Below are positions 11,005-32,133 of a stretch of DNA of 64,000 bases, in pieces; the stretch's first letter is position 1; each line of letters opens with the position of its first letter. Source of the DNA: Octopus sinensis. Its lineage: Eukaryota. Both the position numbers and the translations under genes were made by a program. Under the pieces are notes generated by a model, which had not been told where the DNA came from, did no database searches, and was given only the letters and a program-made list of their open reading frames with translations. Where the stretch lies: positions 2,790,001-2,854,000 of the forward strand of contig NC_043003.1 in NCBI RefSeq assembly GCF_006345805.1, written 5' to 3'.

Positions 11005-11182
11005 CTGATGTTTTCCATAAACTTGCTGGCACCATAGATGGCATGACCATCTTCTGAGCACCTGTTGCTTCCATTTCTTCATCAATAAGGCGTCTGAGTT
11101 TTTCCAATGCCCTCATTCCCAAGGGAAGGATATAATAATGGCCAGAATAACACTGCTGGATGATTTCATTGTATAACATCAG
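11005..11182 (-). CDS. PARS2: Mitochondrial prolyl-tRNA synthetase, coding exon 2 (LMLYNEIIQQCYSGHYYILPLGMRALEKLRRLIDEEMEATGAQKMVMPSMVPASLWKTS(G))
   Basis: 178 nt, acceptor ttttcttttcaag, donor CAG|gtaatt, phase 0/1; class IIa aaRS motif 1 region (bacterial-type/mitochondrial ProRS). Confidence 0.95.
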
Positions 11183-11200
11183 CTTGAAAAGAAAATTCAT

Positions 11201-11230
11201 GATAATAATAATAATAATAATAAAATAATA

Positions 11231-11268
<38 letters not shown>

Positions 11269-11285
11269 AGCAATAATAATAATAT
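11201..11285. repeat. Compound (ATA)n(ATG)n(ATA)n microsatellite
   Basis: Direct reading; starts about 18 nt from the exon 2 acceptor. Confidence 0.95.
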
Positions 11286-11294
11286 GGCAAGACC

Positions 11295-11925
11295 ATTTGT
11301 ATGGACAGGCTAGCGATACTGTCAGGGGAGGTTATGAAGCAGATAAAAGAGACGGGCTATAAATACTTGGGGATATTGGAAATGGATAAATTGATGGAGA
11401 AAGAAATGACCGAAAAATTTAAGGCGGAATACTTGCGCAGACTGAGACTGATCCTTAAGTCGAATTTTATCGGACAGAATAAGATTGATGCTATCAACAC
11501 CTGGGTGGTTTCACTCCTTAGATATGGAGTAAGGATAATCGCATGGACAGTAGACGAACTAAACAGCTTAGACAGAAAGACAAGGAAGTTGCTGACAAGA
11601 TATGGATCATTCCGCCCAAAAAGTGACACAGACAGACTGTATGTACCAAGAAAAAGAGGGGGAAGAGGACTTATTGGATGCAAACACAGCATTAGAGCAG
11701 AAGAAAACAACATAGCATGGTAGTAAAAAATTCCACAGAACCGCCATTACTAAAAGTAGGAAAGTCAGGCTTGTGTAAGATGAAAGATTACAAAGATAAA
11801 GCACTGTACAAGAAATTGAAAACGAATGAAACTGAAAATAGGTGGATAAAGAAAAGAATGCATGGTCAGTTTCATAGGGATGTTGAAGATCAGACAGACA
11901 GAGAAAAAGATGGCTGTGGATGACT
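11295..11925 (+). mobile_element. Degenerate R4/Dong-like non-LTR retrotransposon fragment (late RT/thumb region)
   Basis: GYKYLGILE, NKIDAINTWVVSLLRYG, LDRKTRKLLT, DRLYVPRKRGGRGL; stop/frame break near 11723. Confidence 0.75.
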
Positions 11926-12369
11926 AATATATGCAGTTTTCTCTGTGCCTTATTACAGCTTGTATTGATGCAGCCTTGCCTTGGTGGGTTGGTTTGTGTA
12001 CCTTAATGACCATGAGAGCTATACCAGAAGAGTGCAAGCTCAGGTAAGGCCTCCCATGTTGGACAGATCAAAGGGTAGAGGCCAGACTAATAAGGACCAA
12101 CTCTTCTCAGAAGTAAAAATGGGATTGAATAGGGCCAATACACCTACCTAGAAAAAGCAAAGTTACTGAAGCATCAATGACAAAACCAACAAGACCTGTG
12201 AGAGGGGTGGGGGCCTCCTTCAGGTAAACAGGTGAAGCAGAATCTGAAAGGAAAAATTAAGGGTCCAACTGGAGAAAAGCAGAAAAGACAGCCCAGAATC
12301 ACGAACAATAAAGAAAAGTTGTAGATGGCCTACACTCCATAAGGAGCAAAGGGCTTCAGTACTGATGGG

Positions 12370-12727
12370 GAAGCACCTGCACTGGCAGTACATAAAAAGC
12401 ACCAGGGCTGGTACCATATAAAAAGCACCCAGGCCCGCACCATGTTAAAAGTACCAGGGCTGGTGCCATATAAGGAGCACCTGGGCCTGCACCATGCTAA
12501 AAGTTCTTGTGCTGGTGCCATGTAAAAAGCTACCATGCTGTTAGCTCATAAAAAGCATCCAGTACACTGTGTAAAGTGGTTGGCATTAGAGAGGGCATCC
12601 AGCTGTAGAAACCAAGCCAAAAACAGGCTATGGAACCTGGTGCAGCCATCCCAATTTACCAGCTCCTGTCAAACTATCTAACACATGCCAGCATGGAAAA
12701 CGGATGTCCAATGATGATGATGATGAT
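12370..12727 (+). mobile_element. Family C element
   Basis: Tandem aaaaagcacc modules, core and (GAT)n tail. Confidence 0.8.
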
Positions 12728-13230
12728 GTGGCCCAAGGTTTCATTATGTCTGCACAATCTTTTTGCAGTAAATTAATGTTTCTCTCTGTTCTGCTGGCCG
12801 TTGCCTTTGCAGTTTCTCTCAACTTCATTTCTCTCTTTTTCTTTCTTTCTCTCTCTTCTTCTTCTTTCTCTCACTCAGTAATTAATCGACGGTTCTTTGT
12901 TGTAGTTTGTCTTCTTCCCCCCACCCCACCACTTTCTGTGTCTTTCTCTTTCAAGTCCTCCCCCTTCTCCTCTCAATCACAACTCCCTCAATGCCAGTTG
13001 GAAATGTTTCAACAGAAAACGCATTAGTTTTCTATTTACTTTGATAAGAGAACATCGTCATGAATTGATTCCAGCCAAGTAATTACTTACACACACACAC
13101 ACACACACGTGTGTGTGTGTGTGTGTGTGTATGCATGTGCATAAGTGTGTGCAGTGTATATTGAATTTGTATATTTTGTGACACAAAAACAAAAAGGCTC
13201 AAAACCCTTCTGCTTGAAGTTCATGGAACC

Positions 13231-13286
<56 letters not shown>

Positions 13287-13410
13287 CCATCTATGGATCA
13301 TAGTTAATGTAAATACATCATCAGTGAAAGGCAAATCGACTGCTGTATTCATCTCTTAGAACAAGCAGTATTTTTAAATACAGCACATTCACATCTCATC
13401 AACTATGATA

Positions 13411-16400
13411 CACAGATAGCTATTTTAACCACAGATGGCTATTTTAACCACAGATGGCTATTTTAACCACAGATGGCTATTTTAACCACAGATGGCTATT
13501 TTAACCACAGATAGCTATTTTAACCACAGATGGCTATTTTAACCACAGATGGCTATTTTAACCACAGATGGCTATTTTAACCACAGATGGCTATTTTAAC
13601 CACAGATGGCTATTTTAACCACAGATGGCTATTTTAACCACAGATAGCTATTTTAACCACAGATGGCTATTTTAACCACAGATAGCTATTTTAACCACAG
13701 ATGGCTATTTTAACCACAGATGGCTATTTTAACCACAGATGGCTATTTTAACCACAGATGGCTATTTTAACCACAGATGGCTATTTTAACCACAGATGGC
13801 TATTTTTACCACAGATAGCTATTTTAACCACAGATGGCTATTTTAACCACAGATGGCTATTTTAACCATAGATGGCTATTTTAACCACAGATGGCTATTT
13901 TAACCATAGATAGCTATTTTAACCACAGATGGCTATTTTAACCATAGATAGCTATTTTAACCACAGATAGCTATTTTAACCACAGATGGCTATTTTAACC
14001 ACAGATGGCTATTTTAACCACAGATGGCTATTTTAACCATAGATGGCTATTTTAACCATAGATGGCTATTTTAACCATAGATGGCTATTTTAACCACAGA
14101 TGGCTATTTTAACCATAGATAGCTATTTTAACCACAGATGGCTATTTTAACCATAGATAGCTATTTTAACCACAGATAGCTATTTTAACCACAGATGGCT
14201 ATTTTAACCATAGATGGCTATTTTAACCATAGATGGCTATTTTAACCATAGATGGCTATTTTAACCACAGATGGCTATTTTAACCATAGATAGCTATTTT
14301 AACCACAGATGGCTATTTTAACCATAGATGGCTATTTTAACCATAGATAGCTATTTTAACCACAGATGGCTATTTTAACCATAGATAGCTATTTTAACCA
14401 TAGATGGCTATTTTAACCATAGATGGCTATTTTAACCATAGATAGCTATTTTAACCACAGATGGCTATTTTAACCATAGATAGCTATTTTAACCATAGAT
14501 GGCTATTTTAACCATAGATAGCTATTTTAACCACAGATGGCTATTTTAACCATAGATGGCTATTTTAACCATAGATGGCTATTTTAACCACAGATGGCTA
14601 TTTTAACCACAGATGGCTATTTTAACCATAGATAGCTATTTTAACCACAGATGGCTATTTTAACCATAGATGGCTATTTTAACCATAGATGGCTATTTTA
14701 ACCACAGATGGCTATTTTAACCATAGATAGCTATTTTAACCATAGATGGCTATTTTAACCATAGATGGCTATTTTAACCATAGATAGCTATTTTAACCAC
14801 AGATGGCTATTTTAACCATAGATAGCTATTTTAACCATAGATGGCTATTTTAACCATAGATAGCTATTTTAACCACAGATGGCTATTTTAACCATAGATG
14901 GCTATTTTAACCATAGATGGCTATTTTAACCATAGATGGCTATTTTAACCATAGATGGCTATTTTAACCATAGATAGCTATTTTAAACACAGATGGCTAT
15001 TTTAACCATAGATGGCTATTTTAACCATAGATGGCTATTTTAACCACAGATGGCTATTTTAACCACAGATGGCTATTTTAACCATAGATAGCTATTTTAA
15101 CCACAGATGGCTATTTTAACCATAGATGGCTATTTTAACCATAGATGGCTATTTTAACCACAGATGGCTATTTTAACCATAGATAGCTATTTTAACCATA
15201 GATGGCTATTTTAACCATAGATGGCTATTTTAACCATAGATAGCTATTTTAACCACAGATGGCTATTTTAACCATAGATAGCTATTTTAACCATAGATGG
15301 CTATTTTAACCATAGATAGCTATTTTAACCACAGATGGCTATTTTAACCACAGATGGCTATTTTAACCATAGATGGCTATTTTAACCATAGATGGCTATT
15401 TTAACCATAGATGGCTATTTTAACCATAGATAGCTATTTTAACCACAGATGGCTATTTTAACCATAGATAGCTATTTTAACCATAGATGGCTATTTTAAC
15501 CATAGATGGCTATTTTAACCATAGATAGCTATTTTAACCACAGATGGCTATTTTAACCATAGATAGCTATTTTAACCATAGATGGCTATTTTAACCATAG
15601 ATGGCTATTTTAACCATAGATAGCTATTTTAACCACAGATGGCTATTTTAACCATAGATAGCTATTTTAACCATAGATGGCTATTTTAACCATAGATAGC
15701 TATTTTAACCATAGATGGCTATTTTAACCATAGATAGCTATTTTAACCATAGATGGCTATTTTAACCATAGATAGCTATTTTAACCACAGATGGCTATTT
15801 TAACCATAGATGGCTATTTTAACCATAGATGGCTATTTTAACCACAGATAGCTATTTTAACCATAGATAGCTATTTTAACCACAGATGGCTATTTTAACC
15901 ATAGATGGCTATTTTAACCACAGATAGCTATTTTAACCATAGATAGCTATTTTAACCATAGATAGCTATTTTAACCATAGATGGCTATTTTAACCATAGA
16001 TGGCTATTTTAACCATAGATGGCTGTTTTAACCATAGATGGCTATTTTAACCACAGATAGCTATTTTAACCATAGATAGCTATTTTAACCACAGATGGCT
16101 ATTTTAACCATAGATGGCTATTTTAACCACAGATAGCTATTTTAACCATAGATAGCTATTTTAACCATAGATAGCTATTTTAACCGTAGATGGCTATTTT
16201 AACCACAGATGGCTATTTTAACCATAGATGGCTATTTTAACCATAGATAGCTATTTTAACCATAGATGGCTATTTTAACCATAGATGGCTATTTTAACCA
16301 CAGATAGCTATTTTAACCATAGATAGCTATTTTAACCACAGATGGCTATTTTAACCATAGATGGCTATTTTAACCACAGATGGCTATTTTAACCATAGAT

Positions 16401-18157
16401 GGCTATTTTAACCACAGATAGCTATTTTAACCATAGATGGCTATTTTAACCATAGATAGCTATTTTAACCATAGATAGCTATTTTAACCATAGATGGCTA
16501 TTTTAACCATAGATGGCTATTTTAACCACAGATAGCTATTTTAACCATAGATAGCTATTTTAACCATAGATGGCTATTTTAACCATAGATAGCTATTTTA
16601 ACCACAGATGGCTATTTTAACCATAGATGGCTATTTTAACCACAGATAGCTATTTTAACCACAGATGGCTATTTTAACCATAGATGGCTATTTTAACCAT
16701 AGATAGCTATTTTAACCATAGATGGCTATTTTAACCATAGATGGCTATTTTAACCACAGATAGCTATTTTAACCATAGATAGCTATTTTAACCACAGATG
16801 GCTATTTTAACCATAGATGGCTATTTTAACCACAGATGGCTATTTTAACCATAGATAGCTATTTTAACCACAGATGGCTATTTTAACCATAGATGGCTAT
16901 TTTAACCATAGATAGCTATTTTAACCATAGATAGCTATTTTAACCATAGATGGCTATTTTAACCACAGATGGCTATTTTAACCATAGATGGCTATTTTAA
17001 CCATAGATAGCTATTTTAACCATAGATGGCTATTTTAACCATAGATGGCTATTTTAACCACAGATAGCTATTTTAACCATAGATAGCTATTTTAACCACA
17101 GATGGCTATTTTACCATAGATGGCTATTTTAACACAGATGGCTATTTTACCATAGATGGCTATTTTAACCATAGATGGCTATTTTAACCACAGATGGCTA
17201 TTTTAACCACAGATAGCTATTTTAACCATAGATAGCTATTTTAACCACAGATGGCTATTTTAACCATAGATGGCTATTTTAACCACAGATAGCTATTTTA
17301 ACCATAGATAGCTATTTTAACCACAGATGGCTATTTTAACCATAGATGGCTATTTTAACCACAGATAGCTATTTTAACCATAGATAGCTATTTTAACCAT
17401 AGATAGCTATTTTAACCACAGATGGCTATTTTAACCATAGATGGCTATTTTAACCACAGATAGCTATTTTAACCATAGATAGCTATTTTAACCACAGATG
17501 GCTATTTTAACCATAGATGGCTATTTTAACCACAGATAGCTATTTTAACCATAGATAGCTATTTTAACCATAGATGGCTATTTTAACCATAGATGGCTAT
17601 TTTAACCACAGATAGCTATTTTAACCATAGATAGCTATTTTAACCACAGATGGCTATTTTAACCATAGATGGCTATTTTAACCACAGATAGCTATTTTAA
17701 CCATAGATAGCTATTTTAACCACAGATGGCTATTTTAACCATAGATGGCTATTTTAACCACAGATAGCTATTTTAACCATAGATAGCTATTTTAACCATA
17801 GATAGCTATTTTAACCATAGATGGCTATTTTAACCACAGATGGCTATTTTAACCATAGATAGCTATTTTAACCATAGATAGCTATTTTAACCATAGATGG
17901 CTATTTTAACCACAGATGGCTATTTTAACCATAGATGGCTATTTTAACCACAGATAGCTATTTTAACCATAGATAGCTATTTTAACCACAGATGGCTATT
18001 TTAACCATAGATGGCTATTTTAACCACAGATAGCTATTTTAACCATAGATAGCTATTTTAACCACAGATGGCTATTTTAACCACAGACAGTTATTTTAAC
18101 CACAGATGGCTGTTTTAACCACAAATGGCTATCTTAACCACAGATGACTATTTTAAC
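13411..18157. repeat. 19-bp minisatellite array, ~250 copies, consensus CA(C/T)AGAT(G/A)GCTATTTTAAC
   Basis: Uninterrupted 19-nt period over about 4.75 kb; variation almost confined to two positions; terminal units degenerate at 18085-18157. Confidence 0.98.
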
Positions 18158-18189
18158 TTAATTTTACTTCTATTGCATTTAATGGACTC

Positions 18190-18378
18190 TGTGTTAGTTA
18201 TTTAATTTTTTGGCTCAAAAAGTAAAAAGCAAGGCTATGTAGGGGGACATGGAGTTATGTACAGGGTGGTGTTCATGTAAAGAGTTCAGGCCACTTGAGG
18301 TCAAGGGAGACTTTGAACCGAGCGGTCGTCGGCATCTTCACCATCTCGTCTGGCAGCTTATTCCACGGATCCGCAACC
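18190..18378 (-). mobile_element. CR1-like LINE, short 3' end
   Basis: Closely matches 26535-26725 (atgtagggggacatggagtt...acagggtggtgttcatgtaaagagttcaggccacttgagg...ccacggatccgcaac). Confidence 0.85.
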
Positions 18379-18609
18379 TGTGTGTGTGTGGTGTGTGTAA
18401 TTCTTTTTAACTTGGGCAAAAAGCCAGCAATTCTGAGGGGAGGGGTAAGGTAATTCTACCAATCCCAGTATTCAACTGGTACTTTTTTCATCCACCCTGA
18501 AAGGATGAAAGACAAAGCTGACCTTGACAGCATTTGAACTTATAAAGTGAAGAACCAGAAGAAACACACACGTGATTACAGTTGATGTAGAAAGATAAAC
18601 CTGGCAAGC

Positions 18610-19077
18610 AGTTGCATGCTAGCATGGGCTGGACAGTTTGACGAGGGCTGGTCAGCTGGAAGGCTGCACCAGACTCCAATCTGATTTGGCATGGTTTTCA
18701 ATGGCTGGATGCCCTTACCTGATGCCAACCACTCTGAGGGTGTAATGGGTGCTTTTATGTGCCACTGGCACAGGTGCCAATTTGCATGACACCAGTATCT
18801 ACCACGACTGCAGTTTTGCTCGGCTTGATGGGTCTTCTTCTCAAGCACAGACATAATACCAAAAGTCTTGGTCATTCCTCATTGCCTCTATGAGGCCCAA
18901 CACTCAAAAGGTGCTTTTCATGTCCCACCGGCATCGGACACTTTGCCTCCATGAGGTCCAATGCTCAAAAGGTGCCTTTTATGTGCCACCAGCATTGGTG
19001 CCAGTTATATGACACCAGCATCAGCCACAACTATGATTTCACTTAGCTTGACGAGTCTTCTCAAGCACAGCATATCA

Positions 19078-19145
<68 letters not shown>

Positions 19146-20097
19146 TCATCATCATCATTGTTTAAGGTCCATTTTCCATGTTAGCATGGGTTGGATGGTT
19201 CCACCAGGGTCTGAGAAGCCAGGAGGCTGCACCAGGCTCCAGTCTGATCTGGCAGTGTTTCTACAGCTGGATGCCCTTCTTAACGCCAACCACTCCGTGA
19301 GTGCAGTGGGTGCTTATGTGCCACCGGCACAGGAGCCAGAGCAGGCTGGCAATGACCACGATCGGTTGGTGCTTTTTACGTGCCACTGGCACGGACACCA
19401 GTCAAGATGGCACTGGCATTGGCCACGTTCAGATGGTGCTTTTTACATACCACCAGCACGAGTATGACAACTACAATTTCCATTTGATTTTTATTTTGAT
19501 GTTGATGTACTTGACTCAACAGGTCTCCTCAAGCACAGCAGGTCACCCTACGACCCAAGGTAAGCACAGCAGGCCAGCCTGTGAGCCATGAACTCACTTC
19601 ATTTGTCGGGTCTTCACAGTCACATCATATCTTCAGAGGTCTCGGTCTTTCGTCATTGCCTCTATGAGACCCAATGTTCGAAGGTCATGCTTGACCACCT
19701 CATCCCATGTCTTCCTGGGTCTACCTCTACCCCAGATTCCTTCAACTGTTTGGGAGTGGCACTTCTTCACACATCTCTCTTCATCCAACCATAGTACATG
19801 ACCATATATATATATATATATATATCATCATCATCATCATCATTTAGCGTCCGCTTTCCATGCTAGCATGGGTTGGACGGTTCAACTGGGGTCTGGGAAG
19901 CCAGAAGGCTGCACCAGGCCCAGTCTGATCTGGCAGTGTTTCTATGGCTGGATGCCCTTCCTAATGCCAACCACTCCATGAGTGTAGTGGGTGCTTTTTA
20001 CGTGCCACTGGCACAGGGGCCAGACGGGGCTGGCAAACGGCCACGGACAGATGGTGCTTTTTACGTGCCACCGACACGGAGGCCAGTCGGGGCGGCA
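18610..20097 (-). mobile_element. Cluster of three family C elements (~18610-19080, 19140-19800, 19822-20097)
   Basis: Three reverse cores, the second and third beginning at (CAT)n tracts. Confidence 0.85.
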
Positions 20098-20624
20098 TAT
20101 ATATATATATATATATAATATATATATATATATATTATGTTAGTTGGTTCATTGGTTGACTTCCCACTTTGCATTGTAAAGAGAAAGAGAGAGAGAGAGG
20201 AGACAAGTGGACATACTAGACTTGGTTGCAGTCAATGAATAAAAGAATGCCCCCCTCCCCACACACACAATGAAAAAGAAAGAATCGCTGAGACAGACGG
20301 GGAGGAGAAGTAAATTACAGAATAGTTGGCTGTAACTGAAAAAGGCTCTGCAATCGTCGATATTTATTGTAATGAATATTCCTGCTTTTCAAACGAGTTG
20401 TTCATTAGCTGAATAAATTCTTTTGCCTTAATCACTGGGGTATTCGTTAAGTTAAGAATTTATGGCAATTGCTTCAATAATATTAATTAATACACTTTTG
20501 CTACTGTGTGCATTATCAGGAAATATAGCGTACATACAATATTTATGATTTATCTTTTATGAAATTACCCATGTTGGTAGAAGTTTACTTTCAAAGTAAC
20601 ACTCTAGTACGTATGGGTGTGTGT

Positions 20625-21165
20625 GTGGCACTCCGTCGGTTATGATGATGAGGGTTCCAGTTGATCCGATCAACGGAACAGCCTGCTCATGAAATTAACA
20701 TGCAAGTGGCTGAGCACTCCACAGACACACCTATTTCTTTACTACTCACAAGGGGCCAAACACAGAGAGAACAAACAAGGACAGACAAACAGATTAAGTC
20801 AATTATATCGACCCCAGTAACTGGTACTTAATTTATCAACCCCGAAAGGAAGAAAGGCAGAGTCGAGCTCGGCTGAATTTGAACTCAGAACGTAACGGCA
20901 GACGAAATATGGCTACGCATTTCGCCCGGTGTTCTAACGTTTCTGCCAGCTCGCCACTCCACAGACACACTTACCATTAATGTAGTTCTCAAGTAGATTC
21001 AGTGTGACACAGAATGCGACGAGGCTGGCCCCTTTCAATTACTGGTACAACTCATTTTTGCCGGCTTGAAGCAAGGTGAAATAAAGTGTCTTGCATCGCC
21101 GGGAATTGAACCCACAACCTTATGATCATGAGCCAAATACCCTAACCACCGAACCATGTGCCTTC
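20625..21165 (-). mobile_element. Family D SINE interrupted by a family B SINE
   Basis: Reverse match to 6018-6440; head at about 21100-21165. Confidence 0.7.
20731..20954 (-). mobile_element. Full-length family B SINE with a 16-bp target-site duplication
   Basis: cactccacagacacac at 20715-20730 and 20955-20970. Confidence 0.9.
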
Positions 21166-21269
21166 ACACACACACACACACACACACACGTGCAATCGTA
21201 CTTTCACCTCCTTCAATATTACACCCCACTTACTCGAGGGGATCTTGTTTTGCACATACAGGGGGACAT

Positions 21270-21490
21270 CACTAGTGCAGGAGCCATGAAAAAAAGCACC
21301 CATTACACTCTGTAAAGTGGTTGGCATCAGGAAGGGCATCCAGCTGCGGAAACTATGCCGAAGCAGACATCGGAGCTTGGCACTGTCCTCTGGTTATCAC
21401 TTTCGGTTGGATTGTCCAGCCCATGCCAAAATGGGAAAAGGGACATTGATGATGATGACGACGACGACGATGATGGTGGTGGTGGTGGTG
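21270..21490 (+). mobile_element. Family C element, 3' part
   Basis: Core and (GAT)n tail. Confidence 0.75.
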
Positions 21491-22083
21491 GTGATATGTG
21501 TTTATATTTCTGCCGTATATAAGGTAAACAAGATAAGAAAGTTACATAACCAAAACTAAGATTTTGATCAGTTGCCCTTTTTTTTGGTTGATAGTAATCA
21601 CTCCGCTGACGTACACAGCCAGCCGAGGGAACAGAACTTGGATGTGGCTAAGTAATCGTCCTGATATATAACACACACACACACACACAGAGAAAGGTAT
21701 CTAATATTTTGGCTATAAAAGAGGAGGAAAGTTTGTGTTTTCAGGAAATAGTCCACTTAATGAAAATAAATCATTTAAACCCCAAAATTGTATTTAACAA
21801 ATCTGAACAACAAAATGAATTTAAGTACAATTGTTTTTATCACAGAATTACAATTGACACATCATTTTTTATCTTCCTTTGTAAAGAATAAGTTTCTGAT
21901 CTTTAATAAAAGCACGTAACTCTATAAGGATTAAAAGCAGCCACTAATCCCACAGTTATATCGAAAACTGCTAACCCCTTAATGGTTTTTAACAGAATAA
22001 TTTTGGCCACTCACTTTTAATTAACCCTTTTGATGGTTGGGTTTTCGTTCCATCTAATGTGACTCTGCTCAGAAGTCTGTAAA

Positions 22084-23146
22084 TGTTGTTATGGTAGGAA
22101 CCCAGTAATGGAACAAAGGTGACCTACATGCATCTGCGTGGGTTGCATGTTAGCTGTTAACCCTGATGAGGAAAACTCTTGAACAGCGATATGTTAGAAC
22201 CAGTGCAATGTGTTGGTGCTGTGTAGATGTTGTTGATGACGTGGGTGAGAGACATCATGGTAACAACGAAGATGGTGGTCGCTGTAATGTGGTCAGTGGT
22301 TAGACCTTAGAAGGTCTGGAACCAACAGACTAGACGGAGGTGAGTTTTTATAGCTGATGGTAGGCTCAAATGCAATTTAGAAAAGAATGGCTCACATGAT
22401 TTATTTGGAGACTGTGGTTGGTTGGGTTGCATATTGGCACGTGATAAAGAGACAAATTGTGACAATATCAACCAATCAGAGTTGTAGATACAACAGGGTC
22501 CAAAACAGCACCCAAAGGTTAGCTATTATCTGCTACATTCATATGTATTTATATACGAGGGTGGGTCAAAAAGTATTGCCATTTTGTTTAGGACAGGTAT
22601 AATTACCAACACAGGAACATGTATCATACATCAAAATGAAGCTGGTCCTCTGTGGATCACATCCCTACTTCTCAACATAGTCACCGTTTCTCTCAATAGC
22701 AATGTTCCACCTTCGAATGAGAGCATGTATCCCTGACCCGTAAAATTCTGTTGACTGTTCTTTGAGCCACTTCTTCACTACCTCCACACTCACCAGATTT
22801 AGCGCCTTCAGACTATCATCTCTTCAGCACCATGAAAGAGGGTTTGAGAGGCAAACATTATTCCAGTGACAAGGAAGTGGAAACTGTAGTGAAGAAGTGG
22901 CTCAAAGAACAGTCAACAGAATTTTACGGGTCAGGGATACATGCTCTCATTCGAAGGTGGAACATTGCTATTGAGAGAAACGGTGACTATGTTGAGAAGT
23001 AGGGATGTGATCCACAAAGGACCAGCTTCATTTTGATGTATGATACATGTTCCTGTGTTGGTAATTATACCTGTCCTAAACAAAATGACATTACTTTTTG
23101 ACCCACCCTCGTATAATAGAGAGGAAGTTCACTACAGTTCGCTACA
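22084..23146 (-). mobile_element. Solo-LTR-like element (diverged copy) hosting the mariner foldback; left boundary uncertain
   Basis: Minus-strand start TGTAGC...GTGAACTTCCTCTCT at 23146, CCAATCAG near 22473, reverse TATAAAAA near 22345, ggtcagtg..tagac block shared with 42819-44834 and 46020-47248. Confidence 0.5.
22556..23111 (+). mobile_element. Mariner-derived foldback element (two 3' ends, 226-bp arms, TA TSD)
   Basis: TA|CGAGGGTGGGTCAAAAAGT ... ACTTTTTGACCCACCCTCG|TA; arms 22556-22781 and 22886-23111 differ at 3 positions; 22781-23002 encodes PPHSPDLAPSDYHLFSTMKEGLRGKHY...RRWNIAIERNGDYVEK*. Confidence 0.93.
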
Positions 23147-23734
23147 ACCCCATTGTCAGTTCTAATTGCATTAGAAATTAGTTCAATACCCTTTTCAACT
23201 CCCTTACCAGCATCACCATTAACCTGGGGTCTTTCCAATGTGCTCCTATTCTTTCCTACATCAGTCAAGTTTCTTATTGGTTTCATTTGGTCAGCAGGGA
23301 CCAAAACAATTTCCTTACACTATTTAGTAATTAGGGCAATGTTTATTCATGTCATTACCATAATAAAGATAATATTCTTGAAATCACAAGTGCTTTCATT
23401 ATAGAGCGGTACTTTATTCTCAGCTGCGTTATTGGCTTCAAATTTTGGCAGAAGGCCAACAATTTCGGGGATGTGAGTAAGCCAATTACATCGATTCCAA
23501 AAGGGCACACGGCAAAGACAACCTTGACTTGCCACCTTCTCAACTGTGTAGTTAACCATCATTACACACAGACCAAGCTTTTAAACTGAATGAGGTAACA
23601 CACAATAAATTATGGTTTATACTAAAAAGAGGAAATCACAACTACCTCAAAGTTAGGGAAAAAGCCTTTTTATCTATATTTTATAGGTATCACCAATTTG
23701 TCTGTTTCTATTTTGATAGTAAGGTAAAGTTAAC

Positions 23735-23985
23735 AAACTCTGCAAGCACCATTCAAGTGTGGTCGATGCCAGTACTGCCTGACTGGCCCTTGTGCCGGTG
23801 GCATGTAAAAAATACCCACTACACTCTCAGAGTGGTTGGCGTTAGGAAGGGCATCCAGTTGTAGAAACTCTGCCAGTTCAGATTGGAGCCTGGTGCAGCT
23901 TACTGGCTTGCCAACCCTTAGTCAAACTGTCCAACCCATGCCAGCATGGAAAGCAGACGTTAAACAATGATGATGATGATGATGA
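23735..23985 (+). mobile_element. Family C element
   Basis: Core and (GAT)n tail. Confidence 0.85.
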
Positions 23986-23999
23986 TAACATTACTATCC

Positions 24000-24330
24000 G
24001 TCCATTTCTACCCACTGTTCCTAGAAGGATCATGAAGGTAGAGTCCTTAGACACCTCCTCCACAGAATCCTATCAGAAGCAACCACTATTACACTTTCCG
24101 TTTGGATTCCTAAGCATGACCAACTGAGTCTACGGACATTATCCATCCTGTTGTTGCTCTGCCCTGGGTCTCCTGCTGGTTGGCTCAGCCAGAAGAATCC
24201 ATTTTGTGATTCCTTTCTGTGACATTCTAATCACACGTGTGATCACATGGCTGTCATAAAATTCACAAGCATCGTCTGGCATTCAAAGAATTTATGAAAG
24301 AAAATCCAACTTTGTTATTGGAGCTCATCC
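24000..24330 (-). mobile_element. Degenerate RTE-like LINE 3' end
   Basis: Frameshifted translation gives ILLAEPTSRRPR and DNVRRLSWSCLGIQTESVIVVASDRILWRRCL, resembling the RTE R.RGRP..RW.D...DR..WR motif. Confidence 0.55.
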
Positions 24331-24719
24331 GCTTGAAACATGGAATGATATCAACCAATAGCAAAAAAATATCCAACATTAGTCATGTGTCTACAGGAAT
24401 TACCAAGTGTGATGGCATATAAGATACACTTTGAAAAGAAAATCCCCCTGGGTAGTGCAGTATGCATGGCTGGACCTCCCGTTAGCTAAGCCTGTCCCTG
24501 ATGCTCACTTTTCCTGCATAAACACTGTTGAAATTGCAGTGCATCTTCTATGCCATCAAATATGGTGTCCCTTCCTTTGTACAAAAACCCTTCTTGATCA
24601 AATCATGGCAGCCATTGTAATTATGTCCCTGTTGGTTGTACGTCAGCAAGCAAAGGGCTTTAAGGGCTTTAGTTGAAGCATGACCAGAAGTGATACATTT
24701 CACCTGAGCTCTCAGTATA

Positions 24720-24935
24720 TTCTTTTCTACTCTAGGCACAAGGCTCGAAATATTTGGGGGAGGGGGCCAGTCAATTAGAGTGACCCTAGTATGCAACTGG
24801 TACTTAATTTATTGACCCCAAAAGGATGAAAGATAAAGTCAACCTCGGCGGAATTTGAACTCACAGCGTAAAGACAAATGAAATACCACTATGTATTTCA
24901 CCCGGCATGCTAATGTTTCCGCCAGCTCCCTGTCT
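24720..24935 (-). mobile_element. Family B SINE
   Basis: Reverse family B head and body. Confidence 0.85.
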
Positions 24936-24949
24936 TTAGCTCTCAGTAT

Positions 24950-26040
24950 ATGTTGAACGAGGGTTTCATAAAACTGCCTTCATCTATGTTTCCTGACATT
25001 ATTTAAGTTCATCACAGACTCTTCAGAGTAGGATGATATCTAAGTTCTGTTTGGAAGTGTTGACACCCAATCCATGTTTTCCCTAATAATTCAGAGGTGT
25101 ATACTGAGGAGCTGTGGCCTTTTGAAACCCAGATTTTGTTGTTCTTTGTTTTTATCCAAGAAAGAAAGAGAGCAGGACTCTTGGAATTATGCAATATCAA
25201 GTTCAGGGATTTGTACAACTTTCAAGATTTTCTTGATGTAAATGACTGCTGACCAATTCCTTGTTCATTCCAAGAAATTGATTCAAAATTCGCTTTTCAG
25301 TATTTCATCTGATGTATGGGACCAATCTTGTTTCCTTTAGATCTTTTGATTACCCACAATCCAGTAGATTGCAGCAAGAGTCTAGAGAACTGAGGACAAA
25401 GGTCTTTCACAGATTAACATTTTCTATTTTGGCTCAGAATGTTTACAGGATCTGTCGCACCTTTCTGCACAATTTTACCATTTTTGTAATATATGAATGG
25501 ACAATGAAGAGTTGCTTATTACAATTCCAAACCCCAAAGATTTTGGAATTAATATTGTAATTTCTTCCAGCCCTGTGTATCCACATTACAGTGTTAGAGA
25601 TTTTAGAACTTTCCCACCTTGAATTTCATGTTTCTGTGCACAGCACTGAGGTCCACAGGCAGTTTCTTCATTTCTTGAGGTCACAGATCACAACTGGCAG
25701 CCTATCATCTTATGATCAATTTTGTCAAAGGTATTGGTAAAGTATAAACATGCCACAATTACAACTGATTAGGTGTATAACCGATTTAACATTTGGCCAC
25801 AATGCCACAGCACTTGTGTGAGCCAGCTTCCATCAGGGTGGAAACCATGTTAGGTATCATTTAGTAAGTTATTTTTCTGCTCACAGATATTCAGTTTCCC
25901 TTTGATAATTCATTCCATGATGCAGGTATCACCATGTAATTTTGGATTCATTCCCACAGCACCATGAATGAGTGTTTTGTTCTCTACTATCATCTCAAGC
26001 TGACCACTGCCTTGTCAATTGAGTGATGTGTCTCTGTCCG
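24950..26040 (-). mobile_element. Highly degenerate CR1/L2-like reverse transcriptase fragment
   Basis: NNLLNDT*HGFHPDGSWLTQVL...VACLYFTNTFDKIDHKMI resembles LL.DSQHGFR.GRSCLTQL...YLDF.KAFDKVDH; many stops. Confidence 0.6.
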
Positions 26041-26532
26041 TTACGTTTTTATGTTCGTTAACTCCTCCTAAACCATTGGTGTAAGGACAACAAAACTCAA
26101 ACCAGCAACTCCCCATGTCCTAAGGGGATCTATTTTTTTAAAGGTTGCCTAATTGGGGCCCTACTGACCTCTTATTTTTACTGCATTTTAAACTAAATAC
26201 ATGGCATTGGCGACCAGATCAGAGAAATGTCAATAAATTTCATACCATGAACTCCCAAGGAGCATTGTAAAGAGGTTTAATTTCCGAAGGGCCGCTTAAA
26301 TGGGGTCTACTGATCCCTACTATCTTTACTGCATTTACCTTGCTCCTATGCTTATTAATTAAACTATGATCATCATCAGTGCTTAGCACATCTGCAGAAA
26401 TAAGTTTGGACATTTCTAAATACCTTCATGTACATTCAAGGTGAGATAAAGAGCTATAACAGGTACGCTTCAAGTGTGATAGTGTGGATATTTATATTTT
26501 GTAGTTTATGAAATTTATGTCTACTGTATATA

Positions 26533-27307
26533 TGTTAGTTAGTTAGTTAGTTAATTTGGCTCAAAAGCAAATAGCAAGGCCATGTAGGGGGACATGGAGT
26601 TAAGTACAGGGTGGTGTTCATGTAAAGAGTTCAGGCCACTTGAGGTCCAGGGAGGCTTTGAACAAAGCGGTCGTCGGCATCTTCACCATCTCGTCTGGCA
26701 GCTTGTTCCACGGATCCGCAACCCGGACGGAGAAAGCTACTCTCCTTCGATTGAGATGAAATCGTCGCAGGTAGAGCTTTTCGGAATGACCCCGCAGCCG
26801 ACGCTCCGGAGCAGGAGTGAAGAACAGCTCTTTCGAGAGGTTACACTTCCCGCTTATGATGTGGGCGAGAATGAGATCACCACGGCGGCGGCGTTTTTCA
26901 AGAGAATAAAGGTCGAGCGTCCTCAGCCTTTCTTCGTAGGACAAATTTTTGAGACCATGAACCATGCGGGTAGCCAGCCTCTGGACTCTTTCGAGGTGCT
27001 GTATGTTTTTGAGGAGATAAGGAGAAGAGGCTTGAATCCCATACTCCAATATGGGTCTCACCAGCGTGACATAGAGTGGCAGGAATATGGCTGCTGTGAG
27101 CATTCCGAATGACCGTCGAATCAAAAACAGAATTCCGCGCGCTTTGTTGGCAGCATGGACGCACTGGGCCGAAGGCGAAAAGGAGGAATCCACCAAGATA
27201 CCCAGGTCCTTTACCTGATCGGTCCTCTCCAGCAGCAGACGACCCGGCTCGAAATCAAGTTGAGTTGCAGGAGTAGAGCCGACAGGCAGCTGACAGCACT
27301 TTGACAC
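26533..27307 (-). mobile_element. 5'-truncated CR1-like LINE, open 3' end of ORF2 with (TAAC)n tail
   Basis: 229-aa open frame with KDLGILVDSSFSPSAQC, LYVTLVRPILEY, LERVQRLATRMV, YEERLRTLDLYSLEKRRRRGDLI; tail (ttag)n on plus strand at 26533-26552. Confidence 0.92.
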
Positions 27308-27829
27308 GTATATATATATATATATATATATACATACACATTATGATTTCACTTAGGCATAGCAATACTATTAACCAGTCGTTAGAACTCAAGATATTTA
27401 TGCTTTACAGTAAAGCATTAGGAAAGTACAGAGCATAATATCTATTAATGAATGACAAAAGCTGACTGCTTCTGCAATGAGAAGCATTGCACTCAGAGCT
27501 GAGCAGTTGTGCAACATCGTACAGCTTCCTTGGAGCTATTAAAAGCATTCAGATTTGGAGGTGTTGCTTCTTACAGCAGAAACAACTGTAAGCTAATGAA
27601 GGGGATTCTGTAACTCCTGCTCTTTTATCATTTGTTAATTGACACACACACTCACATACGTAAGTAACTTTGAATTCGGTAACTAAATTATTTTTACTGC
27701 AACAAAATGTAAAACTATGTAGCAAGGCTTTGACCAGACAAAAGAACCTTATGCACCTGAATTATATTCTTTAAAAAGCAGGACTAGTTCTGTGAACTTC
27801 ATTATATCGCCATAAAAGGCACAAATGCC

Positions 27830-28378
27830 TACATCATTATCACCCATTGTCCATGCTGGCATGGGTTGGATGGTTTGACTGGGCTGGCACACTGGAAGAC
27901 TGTGCCAGGTCCCAGTCTGATTTGGCTTAGTTTTCTACAGCTGGATGCCCTTCTTAACGCCAACCATTTCGAGTGTAATGGGTGTTTTTATGTGCCACCG
28001 GCATGGGTGCCATTTGCGTGACACTGGTATCTGGCACGACTGTGATTTTGCTCAGCTTGATGGGTCTTCTCAAACATGATATAATGCCAAAGGTCTTGGT
28101 CATTGCCTCTGTAAGGCCCAACACTTGAAAGGAGCTCGGCCACTTTACCCCCATGGGGTCCAATGCTTGAAAGGAACTCAGTCACCTTGCCTTTGTGAGG
28201 CCTAACACTCATAAGCAACTCAGCCACTTGCCTCCATGAGGCCCAATGCTTGAAAGGGATTCAGCCACTTGCCTCAATGAGGCCCAACGCTTGAAAGGAA
28301 CTCAGCCATTTGCTTTCAAGCATTAGACCTCATGGGGCAAGTGGCTGAGTCCCTTTCGAGCATTGGGCCTCGTTGGAG
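27830..28378 (-). mobile_element. Family C element with a 41-bp tandem module array and a terminal inverted module
   Basis: Core at 27830-28000; modules gaggcccaatgcttgaaagggattcagccacttgcctc at about 28113-28313; inverted copy at 28326-28378. Confidence 0.75.
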
Positions 28379-28681
28379 GCATGTTTATTGATCAATCAGT
28401 ATTGGCTGGCATATTAGAGGGGCAGTATTAAAGAAAAGTTATGTAAATTCCTTCCAAACTGCATTTGTGAAGGTTCTAGAAGCTTTGCCTCGAGTTATAA
28501 AAAAACTGAAGTATTGAACCCTCAAACAGAGCTACCTGAGACTCTACATAGAACTCTGTTGCTCAGTTCCAAAAAATATTCTCTCACTTCCTTCTACTTG
28601 CTGCTTGTCTCAACTATACACGTATACCACATAACAACATCAACTGAAACACGATTTCTATTTTATGTGCTGTAAATAAGT

Positions 28682-29005
28682 ATCATCATCATCGTTTAAT
28701 GTCCGTTTTCCATGCTAGCATGGGTTTGACGGTTCGACTGAGGTCTGGGAAGCCAGGAGGCTGCACAAGGCCCAGTCTGATCTAGTAGTGTTTCTACTGC
28801 TGGATGCCCTTCCTAACGCCAACCATTCCGTGAGTGTAGTGGGTGCTTTTTATGTGCCAGGCGAGGCTAGCAACGGCCACGATCGGTTGGTGCTTTTCAC
28901 GTGCCACCAGCATGGAGGCCAGTCGAAGTGGGGCTGGCAACGGCTACGTTCGGATGGTTCTTTTACGTGCCACCGGCACCGGTATCACAACTACAATTTC
29001 CATAA
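28682..29005 (-). mobile_element. Family C element
   Basis: Reverse core. Confidence 0.85.
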
Positions 29006-30292
29006 TTCTTCTGTACATATGTAAAATATATAATCTGTTTCAAATAATACATTTTTGGAAACACACATCACTTCTTGATGGGTCATTCACATCTTAGAAT
29101 GCAGCCTCTAACCTTCTGCCTCATTACCACAATCAACACAATAATATCCTCATTATATATTCCCGTTCCATGATGACATGGATTGAACAGGTCAATATTG
29201 TTCGAGTCAATTTTTATTCAGAGCAATTTCCCTCCTAATCATCATCATTTAATGTCTGCTTTCCATGCTGGCATGGTTTAGGCAGCTGGATGCCCTTCCT
29301 AACAGCGAACACTCTACAGAGTGTACTGGGTGCTTTTTACGTGGTACCAGTCACCAAGTAACTTGCAGGACAAGGCCTTTCAATGGAGGTGGGAGAGTAA
29401 TATTGATAGGCAGAAAAAGGAGTCTTGCATTAGAGTGGAAACATGGCTGCTTCAGGTGGGGAGAGTGGAGAGCGAGGGGTGAGTGTGAGGAAGAAGATGG
29501 TGGTGACAGTGAGTGCAACAGGGACTGGAGGGGGGGTAAGTTAACAAGATTGCAAAATGTGAGTGGTAGATGGAGGGGGTGTTAGGAGGATATGCTGTGG
29601 AGAAGCGAGTCAATGGGGACATCCTGTGTACAGGTAGCCATGTGAGGGATTAGTATGGGGGGGGGGGCTGAGAATGCAGAAGTTGGTAAGCATGGGTAGA
29701 GGGAAGATGGGTTGAGGGGGAGGTTTGTCAAGGAAAGATTGTGTTGGAGGGTAGGGGCACGAACATAAAGGACATGCTTTTATAACCTCAACTCTACTTA
29801 GTTGGGCAAATCTTCTCAAGCCCAGGCAAATTGCCGGTCGTCTCGGTCCTTTGTCCTCTCCTCCGTGTGGCTCCACAGCAGCAGCAAAAGTTTTCTAAAA
29901 TGCTATTTTTCAAAATTCAACCCACACTTCATCATTTTACATCATTAGCGAGGATGACACTAACTTTTTATTGCCACTCCTGACATGTACAAACGAAGCA
30001 CATTAATACAAAATACATGTATGAATGAATAATTAAAAGGAAACAAATTTAGATTTGGTTACTCAGACATTTAATTACTACAATTTACATTTTATTTCCC
30101 ATAGAATAAAATAAAACTTGACAAAGTAATTAAATGAATGATAAATAAATTGAAACTAATTATAGTCTATCCATTCAGCAAATAGTTTTTGTTACTTTCT
30201 GCCTCAAGAACTCATAAATTTAAGACAAAGACACCCTCATTGCCCCATGCTGCTTTCATAACCTTCTTTCACATACATTTACAGGTTTTCGG

Positions 30293-32124: not shown

Positions 32125-32133
32125 GATGATAGT

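What the first reader, a model, noticed from the sequence alone, without database searches (positions are those of the whole stretch)
13411..18157. Two-bit 19-bp array whose two variable positions each switch a transcription-factor motif (RUNX and GATA)
Seen: about 250 units in PARS2 intron 1 vary almost only at two sites, C/T in AACCA(C/T)A and G/A in AGAT(G/A)G, giving four unit types (CG, CA, TG, TA). Established: AACCACA (reverse TGTGGTT) is the RUNX consensus and AGATAG fits WGATAR; RUNX and GATA factors cooperate in blood-cell development (Lozenge/Serpent in flies, RUNX1/GATA1 in mammals). The four unit types therefore carry RUNX only, both, neither, or GATA only, with the two sites adjacent. 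Inference: the array could act as a tunable dense binding platform, enhancer or factor sink. Coincidence is a real alternative, since both changes are simple transitions.
Basis: partly seen in the sequence, partly recalled or inferred. Interest (0 to 1): 0.7.

Follow-up and report, generated by a model that had tools for sequence, protein, structure and literature searches.

The report
Intronic minisatellite with two variant sites
A 4.7-kb run of 250 almost identical 19-base units in the first intron of a mollusc's mitochondrial prolyl-tRNA synthetase gene differs at only two bases per unit, which is the usual result of repeated internal duplication in a young tandem repeat, and although those two bases do match RUNX and GATA motifs on paper, nothing found here points to a function.

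Summary
Window 13411-18157 holds 250 head-to-tail units of CA[C/T]AGAT[G/A]GCTATTTTAAC. Only those two positions are polymorphic (C105/T145 and G159/A91; unit types CG 77, CA 28, TG 82, TA 63). All other positions are at least 98% invariant. The array lies in the 20.75-kb first coding intron of a PARS2-like gene on the minus strand.

The order of unit types is not free. 56% of 6-unit windows recur, one block of 21 units is duplicated 24 units away, a 4-unit block recurs 10 times, and CA units are absent from 86 consecutive units. This is the signature of nested tandem duplication, as in human variant-repeat minisatellites and the CACNA1C intron-3 VNTR.

The RUNX core AAC|CACA straddles the junction between units. 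It is absent from a one-unit progenitor model and from two single-copy relatives of the progenitor, so it is a by-product of tandem duplication.

The same two sites also switch a CAGATG E-box and an ATAGCTAT palindrome, so the RUNX/GATA code is incomplete. In this unit, 10 of 19 possible transitions toggle some well-known motif.

Verdict: an ordinary, young, AT-rich intronic minisatellite. A transcription-factor platform is possible but unsupported, and these tools cannot test it.

The parts
13411..18157 (.). Minisatellite array: 250 units of CA[C/T]AGAT[G/A]GCTATTTTAAC (247 of 19 bp, 3 of 18 bp)
   Evidence: TRF; anchored parsing and per-position counts; boundaries
13411..13885 (.). Domain A, units 1-25: about 80% CG units with a few CA units; all C at the Y site until about unit 23
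   Evidence: Sliding composition and code string
13886..15785 (.). Domain B, units 26-125: built from CG, TG and TA units; CA units absent from units 43-128; contains a 21-unit block duplicated 24 units downstream; local periods of 18, 20, 10 and 5 units
   Evidence: Longest repeated code substring is 21 units at units 57 and 81 (shuffle mean 7.5, max 12); local lags; code string
15786..18157 (.). Domain C, units 126-250: CA units return (12-24%); 4-unit (76-bp) higher-order block TA-CG-TG-CA ('4132') occurs 10 times; Y alternates T/C and R runs AAGG
   Evidence: '4132' count is 10 against a shuffle mean of 0.68 and max of 4; lag-4 autocorrelation 0.69 in units 201-240
17097..17150 (.). Three adjacent 18-bp units (1-bp deletions in the TTTTAAC tail), i.e. 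a private variant that has itself been duplicated
18082..18157 (.). Four degenerate terminal units at the 3' edge
13285..13309 (-). Left arm of a 25-nt inverted repeat. It is an inverted copy of the array's left boundary, and its last 12 nt read as a TG-type unit core (CCATAGATGGCT)
   Evidence: the repeat finder I1, 84% complementary, 87-nt spacer; 21/25 matches, 0 of 2000 shuffles reach 21 (max 17)
13397..13421 (+). Right arm of the inverted repeat: unique left flank plus the first 11 nt of unit 1 (Y=C, R=A)
37204..37281 (+). Single-copy relative of the progenitor (boundary + one unit-equivalent CATAGATGTCTATTTTAAG + right flank). Y-equivalent is T and R-equivalent is G; no RUNX or CAGATG core anywhere in this copy, and no GATA core at the unit-equivalent
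   Evidence: Local alignment score 37 against a shuffle max of 32 (0/300), best place in the whole window; reverse-complement match to 13287-13332
18193..18378 (+). Truncated copy of a dispersed element, 35 bp to the right of the array. Not the source of the array: the other copy at 26542-26723 has no 19-mer next to it
   Evidence: blastn 92.5% over 186 bp; alignment
13233..13285 (.). (AC)26 microsatellite abutting the left inverted-repeat arm
   Evidence: TRF
31936..32124 (-). PARS2-like exon 1 (ATG at 32124, 63 codons, donor GTAAGG), in the only stretch of 11-34 kb with CpG observed/expected around 1 or higher
   Evidence: tblastn with molluscan mitochondrial ProRS proteins; ORF and donor; CpG scan
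11183..31935 (-). Intron 1 (about 20.75 kb). The array lies 13.8 kb downstream of the exon 1 donor and 2.2 kb upstream of the exon 2 acceptor, in gene orientation
11005..11182 (-). PARS2-like exon 2 (LMLYNEIIQQCYSGHYYILPLGMRALEKL...), acceptor ttttcttttcaAG|, donor CAG|GTAAT
   Evidence: PDB ProRS hits at E 1.5e-9; 1179 relatives; splice-site context

Best explanation
This is a young, AT-rich intronic minisatellite (a VNTR-type array) with two biallelic variant positions. It has no demonstrated function.

**Proposed history**
1. A 19-bp segment (CACAGATAGCTATTTTAAC) of a short low-copy sequence was duplicated head-to-tail. The junction AAC|CACA incidentally created a RUNX-like core.
2. One transition arose at each of two positions early in the array's life.
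3. Unequal sister-chromatid or allelic exchange, replication slippage, and gene conversion or SDSA then copied units and blocks of units (4, 5, 10, 12, 18-24 units) again and again.
4. This spread the two variants and recombined them into four unit types, while the other 17 positions stayed homogeneous.

**Shown:** the anatomy, the restriction of variation to two sites, the nested duplications and domains, the junction origin of the RUNX core, and the existence of unexpanded relatives.

**Inferred:** the molecular mechanism of the duplications, the order of events, and neutrality.
For: **Variation and age**
- Two polymorphic sites only; the remaining divergence is 0.29% per site. This indicates very recent homogenisation or expansion.

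**Copying signature in the order of unit types**
- The code string is strongly non-random. Lag 4 has z=5.2 and lag 24 has z=5.4.
- The longest exact repeat is 21 units, against a shuffle mean of 7.5 and max of 12.
- 56% of 6-unit windows recur, against 10% in shuffles and 20% in first-order Markov simulations; 0 of 1000 simulations reach the observed value.
- The '4132' block occurs 10 times against 0.68 expected.
- The string compresses to 87 bytes, against a minimum of 100 in shuffles.
- Composition is domain-specific: CG is about 80% in units 1-25, and CA is absent from units 43-128.
- A private 1-bp-deletion variant appears as three adjacent copies.
- Degenerate units occur only at the array edge.

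**Internal control**
- The unrelated 48-bp array at 43404-44431 shows the same architecture (DBC EBC DBC EBC ... AAAFAFA).

**Origin**
- Boundaries are exact. The RUNX core spans unit positions 17-19 plus 1-4, and a one-unit progenitor model lacks both it and CAGATG.
- Relatives exist at 13285-13309 (inverted) and at 37204-37281.

**Published analogues**
- MSY1: a 75% A+T minisatellite whose units differ by base substitutions (PMC2599865).
Against: - Neutrality is assumed, not shown.
- Only one haplotype from one individual is available. Copy-number and structural polymorphism, which is the defining behaviour of a VNTR, was not observed.
- The array carries very high densities of three well-known motif cores: RUNX 21/kb against 0.19/kb outside, GATA 18.9 against 2.36, and CAGATG 15.8 against 0.49. 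Tandem repeats with dense motif clusters can be real enhancers (PMC13373173).
- The Y and R positions are also where the boundary unit differs from both single-copy relatives (chance about 0.02-0.03). Pure duplication does not predict this. It hints at hypermutable sites or at conversion between copies.
Confidence: 0.85

Rival explanations
1. Transcription-factor platform. The array acts as a dense binding platform, enhancer or factor sink whose units present RUNX + E-box (CG), RUNX + GATA (CA), GATA (TA) or none of these (TG). Array composition would then tune the expression of PARS2 or of a neighbouring gene in blood or neural cells.
For: - The motif cores are present and are toggled exactly as described.
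- 101 RUNX 7-mers, 91 GATA cores and 76 CAGATG cores lie within 4.7 kb, which is 8- to 110-fold above the rest of the window.
- RUNX + GATA specifically arose in about 1 of 20,000 random simulated arrays, although the pair was chosen after seeing the sequence.
- Srp (GATA) and Lz (RUNX) interact physically and synergise in Drosophila blood cells (PMC6366919).
- Precedents for functional motif-bearing tandem repeats exist: a repeat enhancer with 45 PU.1 sites (PMC13373173), and MNS16A, where a unit variant creates a GATA-1 site (PMC5438627).
Against: - The RUNX core is a junction by-product and is absent from the progenitor relatives.
- Unit order follows duplication blocks.
- The host gene is a housekeeping mitochondrial tRNA synthetase. 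The array is 13.8 kb from the CpG-rich exon 1 region.
- The motif list was chosen post hoc. 10 of 19 transitions in this unit toggle some listed core, and 13% of random arrays have both sites toggling one. A full motif database would raise these rates.
- The same sites can be narrated equally well as a TAL1 or NeuroD-type E-box or as a palindrome.
- The RUNX and GATA cores of a CA unit overlap by one base, which suggests steric exclusion (inference).
- There is no conservation, chromatin or binding evidence of any kind.
Confidence: 0.06
2. Hot-spot or conversion origin of the two-site pattern. Under this reading Y and R are intrinsically hypermutable, or they are exchanged repeatedly by short-tract gene conversion among units and with the inverted flanking copy. 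Much of the interspersion would then come from recurrent switching rather than from block duplication.
For: - The boundary unit differs from the inverted left arm at 4 of 25 positions, and these include both Y and R (hypergeometric p = 253/12650 = 0.02). It also differs at both from the 37.2-kb relative.
- All four Y/R combinations exist, and CA is under-represented (odds ratio 2.2).
- Single-unit 'conversion' of repeat type is documented at MSY1 (PMC2599865).
- R=A creates the ATAGCTAT palindrome, which allows 8-bp pairing between neighbouring A-type units (z = -7.4 and -4.7, against about -1 for G-type units). This could favour misalignment.
Against: - Long exact repeats of the code (21 units, and 56% recurrent 6-unit windows) cannot come from independent switching.
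- Neither site is a CpG.
- The Fisher p-value is inflated because duplicated units are not independent.
- The arm comparison rests on a handful of bases.
Confidence: 0.08
3. Assembly artefact. The array length or unit order would be a product of mis-assembly or collapse of a longer or shorter repeat.
For: A 4.7-kb array at 99.7% identity is hard to assemble. No reads are available to check it.
Against: The boundaries with unique flanks are clean, there is a non-periodic and information-rich interspersion pattern, edge degeneration is present, and private variants occur. All are typical of a real long-read-resolved array.
Confidence: 0.02

Closest known systems
Minisatellites with variant repeats (MVR maps), e.g. 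human two-state minisatellites and the AT-rich Y-chromosomal MSY1
   Same: - Head-to-tail units of tens of bp that differ by base substitutions at very few positions.
- Alleles are describable as a digital string of unit types. [quoted passage not shown]
- Hairpin potential of the units has been invoked for slippage.
   Different: - Two independent biallelic sites give four types here.
- The interspersion is much finer than the MSY1 blocks.
- The unit is 19 bp, there are 250 copies, and the host is a mollusc.
- Polymorphism among individuals was not observed here.
CACNA1C intron-3 VNTR (human)
   Same: It is intronic and kilobase-scale (median 5.7 kb). Most unit positions are strictly conserved (22 of 30), and 6 of the 8 variable positions have a single alternate base. 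[quoted passage not shown]
   Different: The unit is 30 bp with 8 variable positions and 158 distinct units. Population data and an expression association exist for it. Neither is available here.
MNS16A minisatellite downstream of TERT
   Same: A unit variant (the CAT insertion) creates a GATA-1 site, so alleles differ in the number of GATA sites (PMC5438627).
   Different: It is a short promoter-proximal VNTR with reporter data. The variant is an insertion, not a transition. No RUNX component is involved.
Tandem-repeat enhancers with homotypic motif clusters (the MORC3-repressed IFNB1 enhancer with 45 PU.1 sites)
   Same: A tandem repeat that carries dozens of copies of a transcription-factor core (PMC13373173).
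   Different: That element has demonstrated accessibility, factor occupancy, necessity and sufficiency, and a motif cluster conserved across species. None of these has been shown here. In addition, the motifs here are heterotypic and toggle between units.
Drosophila GATA/RUNX cis-regulatory modules (Serpent + Lozenge, crystal cells)
   Same: A GATA core and a RUNX core occur close together. The factors interact and synergise (PMC6366919, which cites Ferjoux et al. 2007).
   Different: Those are unique enhancers next to blood-cell genes. Here the cores abut with a 1-bp overlap, are repeated 250 times, and sit in an intron of a housekeeping gene. The RUNX core also arose from a duplication junction.

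Membership tests
Minisatellite / VNTR with variant repeats | Head-to-tail array of units of about 10-100 bp | tested here: met
   250 units of 19 bp, 13411-18157
Minisatellite / VNTR with variant repeats | Units differ by substitutions at a few positions, giving an interspersion map | tested here: met
   Two biallelic positions and four unit types; the other 17 positions are at least 98% invariant
Minisatellite / VNTR with variant repeats | Internal structure shows tandem duplication of blocks (higher-order repeats, domains) | tested here: met
   21-unit duplicated block; 56% recurrent 6-unit windows (0 of 1000 Markov simulations reach this); '4132' occurs 10 times; domain-specific composition
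Minisatellite / VNTR with variant repeats | Copy number or structure varies among individuals | not testable with these tools
   Only one haplotype is available. No cephalopod genomes or reads are in the reachable collections; the metagenome and prokaryotic genome scans returned 0 hits
Classical hypervariable (GC-rich, recombination-hotspot) minisatellites | GC-rich unit | tested here: not met
   The unit is 7/19 (CG type) to 5/19 (TA type) G+C, so it belongs with AT-rich minisatellites such as MSY1 (sequence; for MSY1)
Tandem-repeat enhancer / homotypic motif cluster | Dense repetition of a transcription-factor core motif | tested here: met
   101 TGTGGTT, 91 WGATAR and 76 CAGATG in 4.7 kb, which is 8- to 110-fold above the rest of the window. 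This is a sequence-level result only
Tandem-repeat enhancer / homotypic motif cluster | Accessible chromatin, factor occupancy and reporter activity | not testable with these tools
   No functional genomic data are available
Tandem-repeat enhancer / homotypic motif cluster | Motif cluster conserved across species or individuals | not testable with these tools
   No orthologous loci are reachable. Within the window, unexpanded relatives lack the RUNX and CAGATG cores
GATA/RUNX cis-regulatory module | GATA and RUNX sites close together and able to be co-occupied | tested here: inconclusive
   Both cores occur in 28 CA units but overlap by one base (AACCACAGATAG). Cores in neighbouring units lie 7-19 bp apart. 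Co-occupancy was not tested
GATA/RUNX cis-regulatory module | Association with a blood-cell gene | tested here: not met
   The host gene is a mitochondrial prolyl-tRNA synthetase. No other gene was identified within the intron
Transposon-derived satellite | Unit homologous to part of a dispersed repeat family | tested here: inconclusive
   Two relatives of the progenitor exist in the window: an inverted arm at 13285-13309 and a copy at 37204-37281. They are short and low-copy and match no high-copy element. The adjacent element at 18193-18378 is unrelated to the unit

The most novel reading that the evidence does not exclude
The array is a recently evolved, haplotype-variable regulatory element. 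Its units present combinations of RUNX, class-II bHLH (CAGATG) and GATA sites, which in vertebrates are the core factors of blood-cell regulation. The mix of unit types, reshuffled by unequal exchange, would quantitatively tune enhancer strength or factor sequestration in cephalopod haemocytes or neurons.
Probability: 0.05. Interest if true: 0.55.

Novelty: new member of a known kind. Interest (0 to 1): 0.15.

Why it matters
As it stands, this is a tidy example of how a minisatellite is born and grows. One can see the single-copy relatives, the exact duplication boundaries, a motif created by the unit junction, two early variants, and layers of block duplication. It would make a highly informative long-read marker for individual or population typing in the host species. 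It also serves as a caution for motif-based readings of repeats. A two-site pattern looks like a code, but it is the expected frequency spectrum of a young homogenised array, and short motif matches are cheap. If the array did prove to bind RUNX, GATA or bHLH factors with unit-type dependence, it would be a rare invertebrate case of a tandem-repeat enhancer with a built-in rapidly mutating dosage dial. Nothing found here indicates that.

Tried and rejected
1. **Fixed-stride parsing from the TRF start.** This wrongly suggested about 50 aberrant units. The cause was three 1-bp-deleted units.
2. **Array carried in by the neighbouring dispersed element (18193-18378).** Rejected, because the 92%-identical copy at 26542 has no 19-mer beside it.
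3. **Other copies of the unit in the window.** None were found.
4. **Other loci in public collections.** An exact two-unit pattern gave 0 hits in metagenome contigs and genome contigs. This is uninformative, because those collections are not animal genomes.
5. **Word-index protein search with the exon.** It found no candidates. The exhaustive search was needed instead.
6. **Pfam on the exon and on four repeat-derived ORFs.** There was no significant family; the only match was a sub-threshold DUF6451 hit.
7. **Regex search for exon 1 using the bacterial ProRS N-terminal motif.** It found nothing. tblastn with molluscan orthologues located exon 1.
8. **Rfam over the whole window.** No hits at gathering score.
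9. **Literature search for the exact 19-mer.** No papers.
10. **Cross-species or cross-individual comparison of the array.** Not possible, because no cephalopod orthologue is in the protein index. The best relatives are about 60% identical and come from a limpet, a scallop and a clam.
11. **Polarity of the two mutations.** Unresolved. The array edges are C-rich at Y, but both single-copy relatives carry T and G.
Full report
**1. The observation**

Tandem Repeats Finder reports a single array at 13414-18157 with period 19, 249.8 copies and 93% matches. A fixed 19-bp stride from that start appeared to give about 50 aberrant units. Anchored parsing showed the cause: three adjacent units near 17.1 kb each lack one base.

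In the natural register, defined by the unique flanks, the array is exactly 250 units of CA[Y]AGAT[R]GCTATTTTAAC from 13411 to 18157. That is 4747 bp = 250x19-3. The left flank ends ...CAACTATGATA and the right flank begins TTAATTTTACTTC....

Only two positions are polymorphic: Y = C105/T145 and R = G159/A91. Every other position is at least 98% invariant. Non-Y/R differences in interior units amount to 12 of 4148 sites (0.29%), most of them from the three 18-bp units read in a fixed 19-bp register. The unit types are CG 77, CA 28, TG 82 and TA 63. The last four units are degenerate.

The unit does not occur elsewhere in the window. There are 246 matches against 0.02 expected, and every listed match lies within the array. 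A three-unit blastn query found nothing outside it.

**2. Gene context**

A minus-strand exon at 11182->11005 has the acceptor ttttcttttcaAG| and the donor CAG|GTAAT. It matches residues ~25-84 of solved bacterial-type prolyl-tRNA synthetases at E 1.5e-9.

An exhaustive protein search found 1179 relatives. The named ones are molluscan proteins annotated 'probable proline--tRNA ligase, mitochondrial', from Patella vulgata, Argopecten irradians and Tegillarca granosa.

tblastn with these proteins located three more exons:
- exon 1 at ~32.06-31.93 kb (KRLYVSKMFQNFGMVQPAKSSLSCSSHK)
- exon 3 at ~7.9 kb
- exon 4 at ~5.25 kb

Exon 1 starts at the ATG at 32124, has 63 codons and ends with the donor GTAAGG. 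It lies in the only stretch of 11-34 kb with CpG observed/expected around 1 or higher.

Intron 1 therefore spans 31935-11183 (20.75 kb). The array lies inside it, 13.8 kb from the donor and 2.2 kb from the acceptor. 'PARS2 intron 1' is supported. The host is mollusc-like, but 'Octopus' could not be verified.

**3. The order of unit types shows copying, not choice**

Coding the units as 1=CG, 2=CA, 3=TG and 4=TA gives a string with strong higher-order structure.
- Autocorrelation peaks at lag 4 (z=5.2) and lag 24 (z=5.4).
- The longest exactly repeated substring is 21 units, at units 57 and 81. Shuffles give a mean of 7.5 and a maximum of 12.
- 56% of 6-unit windows recur. Shuffles give 10% and first-order Markov simulations give 20%; 0 of 1000 simulations reach the observed value.
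- The 4-unit block 4132 occurs 10 times against 0.68 expected.

Composition is domain-specific.
- Units 1-25 are about 80% CG.
- CA units are absent from units 43-128.
- The 3' half is built largely from 4132-type blocks, in which Y alternates and R runs AAGG.

The private 1-bp-deletion variant is itself present as three adjacent copies.

As an internal control, the unrelated 48-bp array at 43404-44431 shows the same architecture: DBC EBC DBC EBC ... AAAFAFA.

This is the pattern described for the human CACNA1C intron-3 VNTR. That array has 22 of 30 positions strictly conserved, and 6 of its 8 variable positions have a single alternate base. [quoted passage not shown] Variant-repeat minisatellites in general show the same pattern (PMC2363947; PMC2599865).

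With so little other divergence, the roughly 236 'variant calls' at Y and R are not independent events. As few as two mutations, plus copying and exchange, suffice to explain them.

**4. Origin**

The array's left boundary (13397-13421) is one arm of a 25-nt inverted repeat. The other arm (13285-13309) abuts the (AC)26 tract. The arms match at 21 of 25 positions, and 0 of 2000 shuffles reach 21.

A third relative lies at 37204-37281.
- In direct orientation it aligns to the boundary, one unit and the right flank of the array. The score is 37 against a shuffle maximum of 32, and it is the best place in the window.
- In inverted orientation it aligns to 13287-13332.
- It is not part of any high-copy element.
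- Its unit-equivalent is a single CATAGATGTCTATTTTAAG.

The array is therefore an expansion of a 19-bp segment inside one copy of a short, low-copy sequence.

The key point concerns the RUNX core. AACCACA occupies unit positions 17-19 plus 1-4, so it is created by the head-to-tail junction AAC|CACA. A collapsed one-unit model of the locus and both relatives contain no RUNX core and no CAGATG. The neighbouring dispersed element at 18193-18378 is unrelated to the unit.

**5. The motif reading**

From general knowledge, TGTGGT(T) is the RUNX core and WGATAR is the GATA core. It is incomplete in two ways.
- Y=C together with R=G makes the E-box CAGATG, which spans exactly from Y to R. From memory, ACAGATGG resembles the preferred TAL1/E-protein site and also NeuroD/Atonal-type sites. 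The 'RUNX-only' unit is thus RUNX + E-box, and either a blood story or a neural story could be told.
- R=A makes a perfect palindrome, ATAGCTAT. In single-stranded DNA, neighbouring A-type units pair over 8 bp. Four-unit folds give -9.0 kcal/mol with z=-7.4 (CA) and z=-4.7 (TA), against z of about -1 for G-type units.

Base rates were estimated with hand-typed lists of IUPAC cores, 67 cores and a trimmed 59-core version. These lists come from my own knowledge, not from JASPAR.
- 10 of 19 possible transitions in the real unit toggle a listed motif.
- 13% of random 19-mers of the same composition with two random transitions have both sites toggling one.
- 2 of 10 variable sites in the control 48-bp array toggle one.
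- RUNX + GATA specifically is rare, about 1 in 20,000 simulations. However, the pair was selected after seeing the sequence, from a very large space of pairs that could be given a story.

In CA units the two cores share a base, so co-binding on one unit is sterically doubtful. This is inference.

Motif density in the array is high: RUNX 21/kb, GATA 18.9/kb and CAGATG 15.8/kb, against 0.19, 2.36 and 0.49 per kb outside it. That follows trivially from repeating any unit 250 times.

**6. What is unexplained**

The boundary unit (Y=C, R=A) differs from the inverted arm at four positions, and these include both Y and R (hypergeometric p=0.02). It also differs at both from the 37.2-kb relative. Both relatives carry T and G.

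Three readings are possible: the ancestral state was TG and the boundary unit was later converted, the two sites are mutation-prone, or it is chance in a handful of bases. The array edges, which usually keep old variants, are C-rich at Y, so the polarity is unresolved.

**7. Comparison with what is known**

In kind, this is an AT-rich variant-repeat minisatellite. Three defining features were met: unit size, substitution variants at few sites, and nested duplication. The fourth, polymorphism among individuals, cannot be tested here. The array is not a classical GC-rich hypervariable minisatellite.

- A tandem-repeat enhancer with 45 PU.1 sites (PMC13373173).
- The MNS16A VNTR, in which a unit variant creates a GATA-1 site (PMC5438627).
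- Srp/Lz (GATA/RUNX) synergy in Drosophila (PMC6366919).

Membership in those classes requires accessibility, occupancy, activity or conservation, and none of these could be tested. The exact repeat appears in no searchable paper, and no Rfam family matches the window.

**8. Verdict**

The best explanation, at about 0.85, is a young and probably neutral intronic minisatellite. Its two-site 'code' records two early transitions that were spread and reshuffled by nested tandem duplication. Its RUNX core is a junction by-product. A functional transcription-factor platform remains possible, at about 0.05-0.06, and could be tested by the experiments listed. Novelty: a new member of a known kind. Interest is low (0.15).

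Noticed in passing
window 13411-18157 (every CG unit): Y=C together with R=G forms the E-box CAGATG, which spans exactly from one variable site to the other (76 copies).
   Followed up: yes
window 13411-18157 (every R=A unit): R=A creates the perfect 8-bp palindrome ATAGCTAT. In single-stranded DNA, adjacent A-type units pair over 8 bp (z = -7.4 and -4.7, against about -1 for G-type units). This is a possible aid to slippage.
   Followed up: partly
window 13285-13309 and 13397-13421: A 25-nt inverted repeat (21/25 matches, 87-nt spacer) links the array's left boundary to a copy that abuts the (AC)26 tract. The four mismatches include both the Y and the R positions (p about 0.02).
   Followed up: partly
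window 37204-37281: An unexpanded single-copy relative of the array locus (boundary + one unit-equivalent + right flank). It carries T and G at the Y and R equivalents and is not part of a high-copy element.
   Followed up: partly
window 43404-44431: A 48-bp x 21 array with 10 variable positions, organised as a 3-/6-unit higher-order repeat followed by a second domain. It also produces long spurious ORFs (335-388 aa) on both strands.
   Followed up: partly
window 38912-40063 and 52079-52805: Large simple arrays, (ATGTATGT)x144 and (TGTA)x178. TRF lists 71 rows for the window, so tandem repeats are a major component of this region.
   Followed up: no
window 31000-33500: Within 11-34 kb, only windows from 31 to 33.5 kb, plus one at 26.5 kb, have CpG observed/expected around 1 or higher (0.95-1.4). 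The 31-33.5 kb stretch surrounds PARS2-like exon 1 and looks like a promoter CpG island, whereas most other G+C-rich windows in that range score 0.07-0.57.
   Followed up: no
window 18612-18780 and at least 14 other places (e.g. 3751, 19856, 27852, 34925, 37713, 62361): A SINE-like dispersed family at 78-84% identity. A second family with a long antisense ORF occurs at 26542-27307 and, truncated, at 18193-18378. Pfam finds no domain in the ORFs.
   Followed up: partly
window 17097-17150: TRF reports 0% indels for the array, although three adjacent units carry 1-bp deletions. Fixed-stride decoding goes out of register here.
   Followed up: yes
window 11005-11182 (tool behaviour): The word-index protein search returned no candidate for the exon. 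The exhaustive search found 1179 relatives, including annotated molluscan orthologues. No cephalopod orthologue appears to be in the index.
   Followed up: yes
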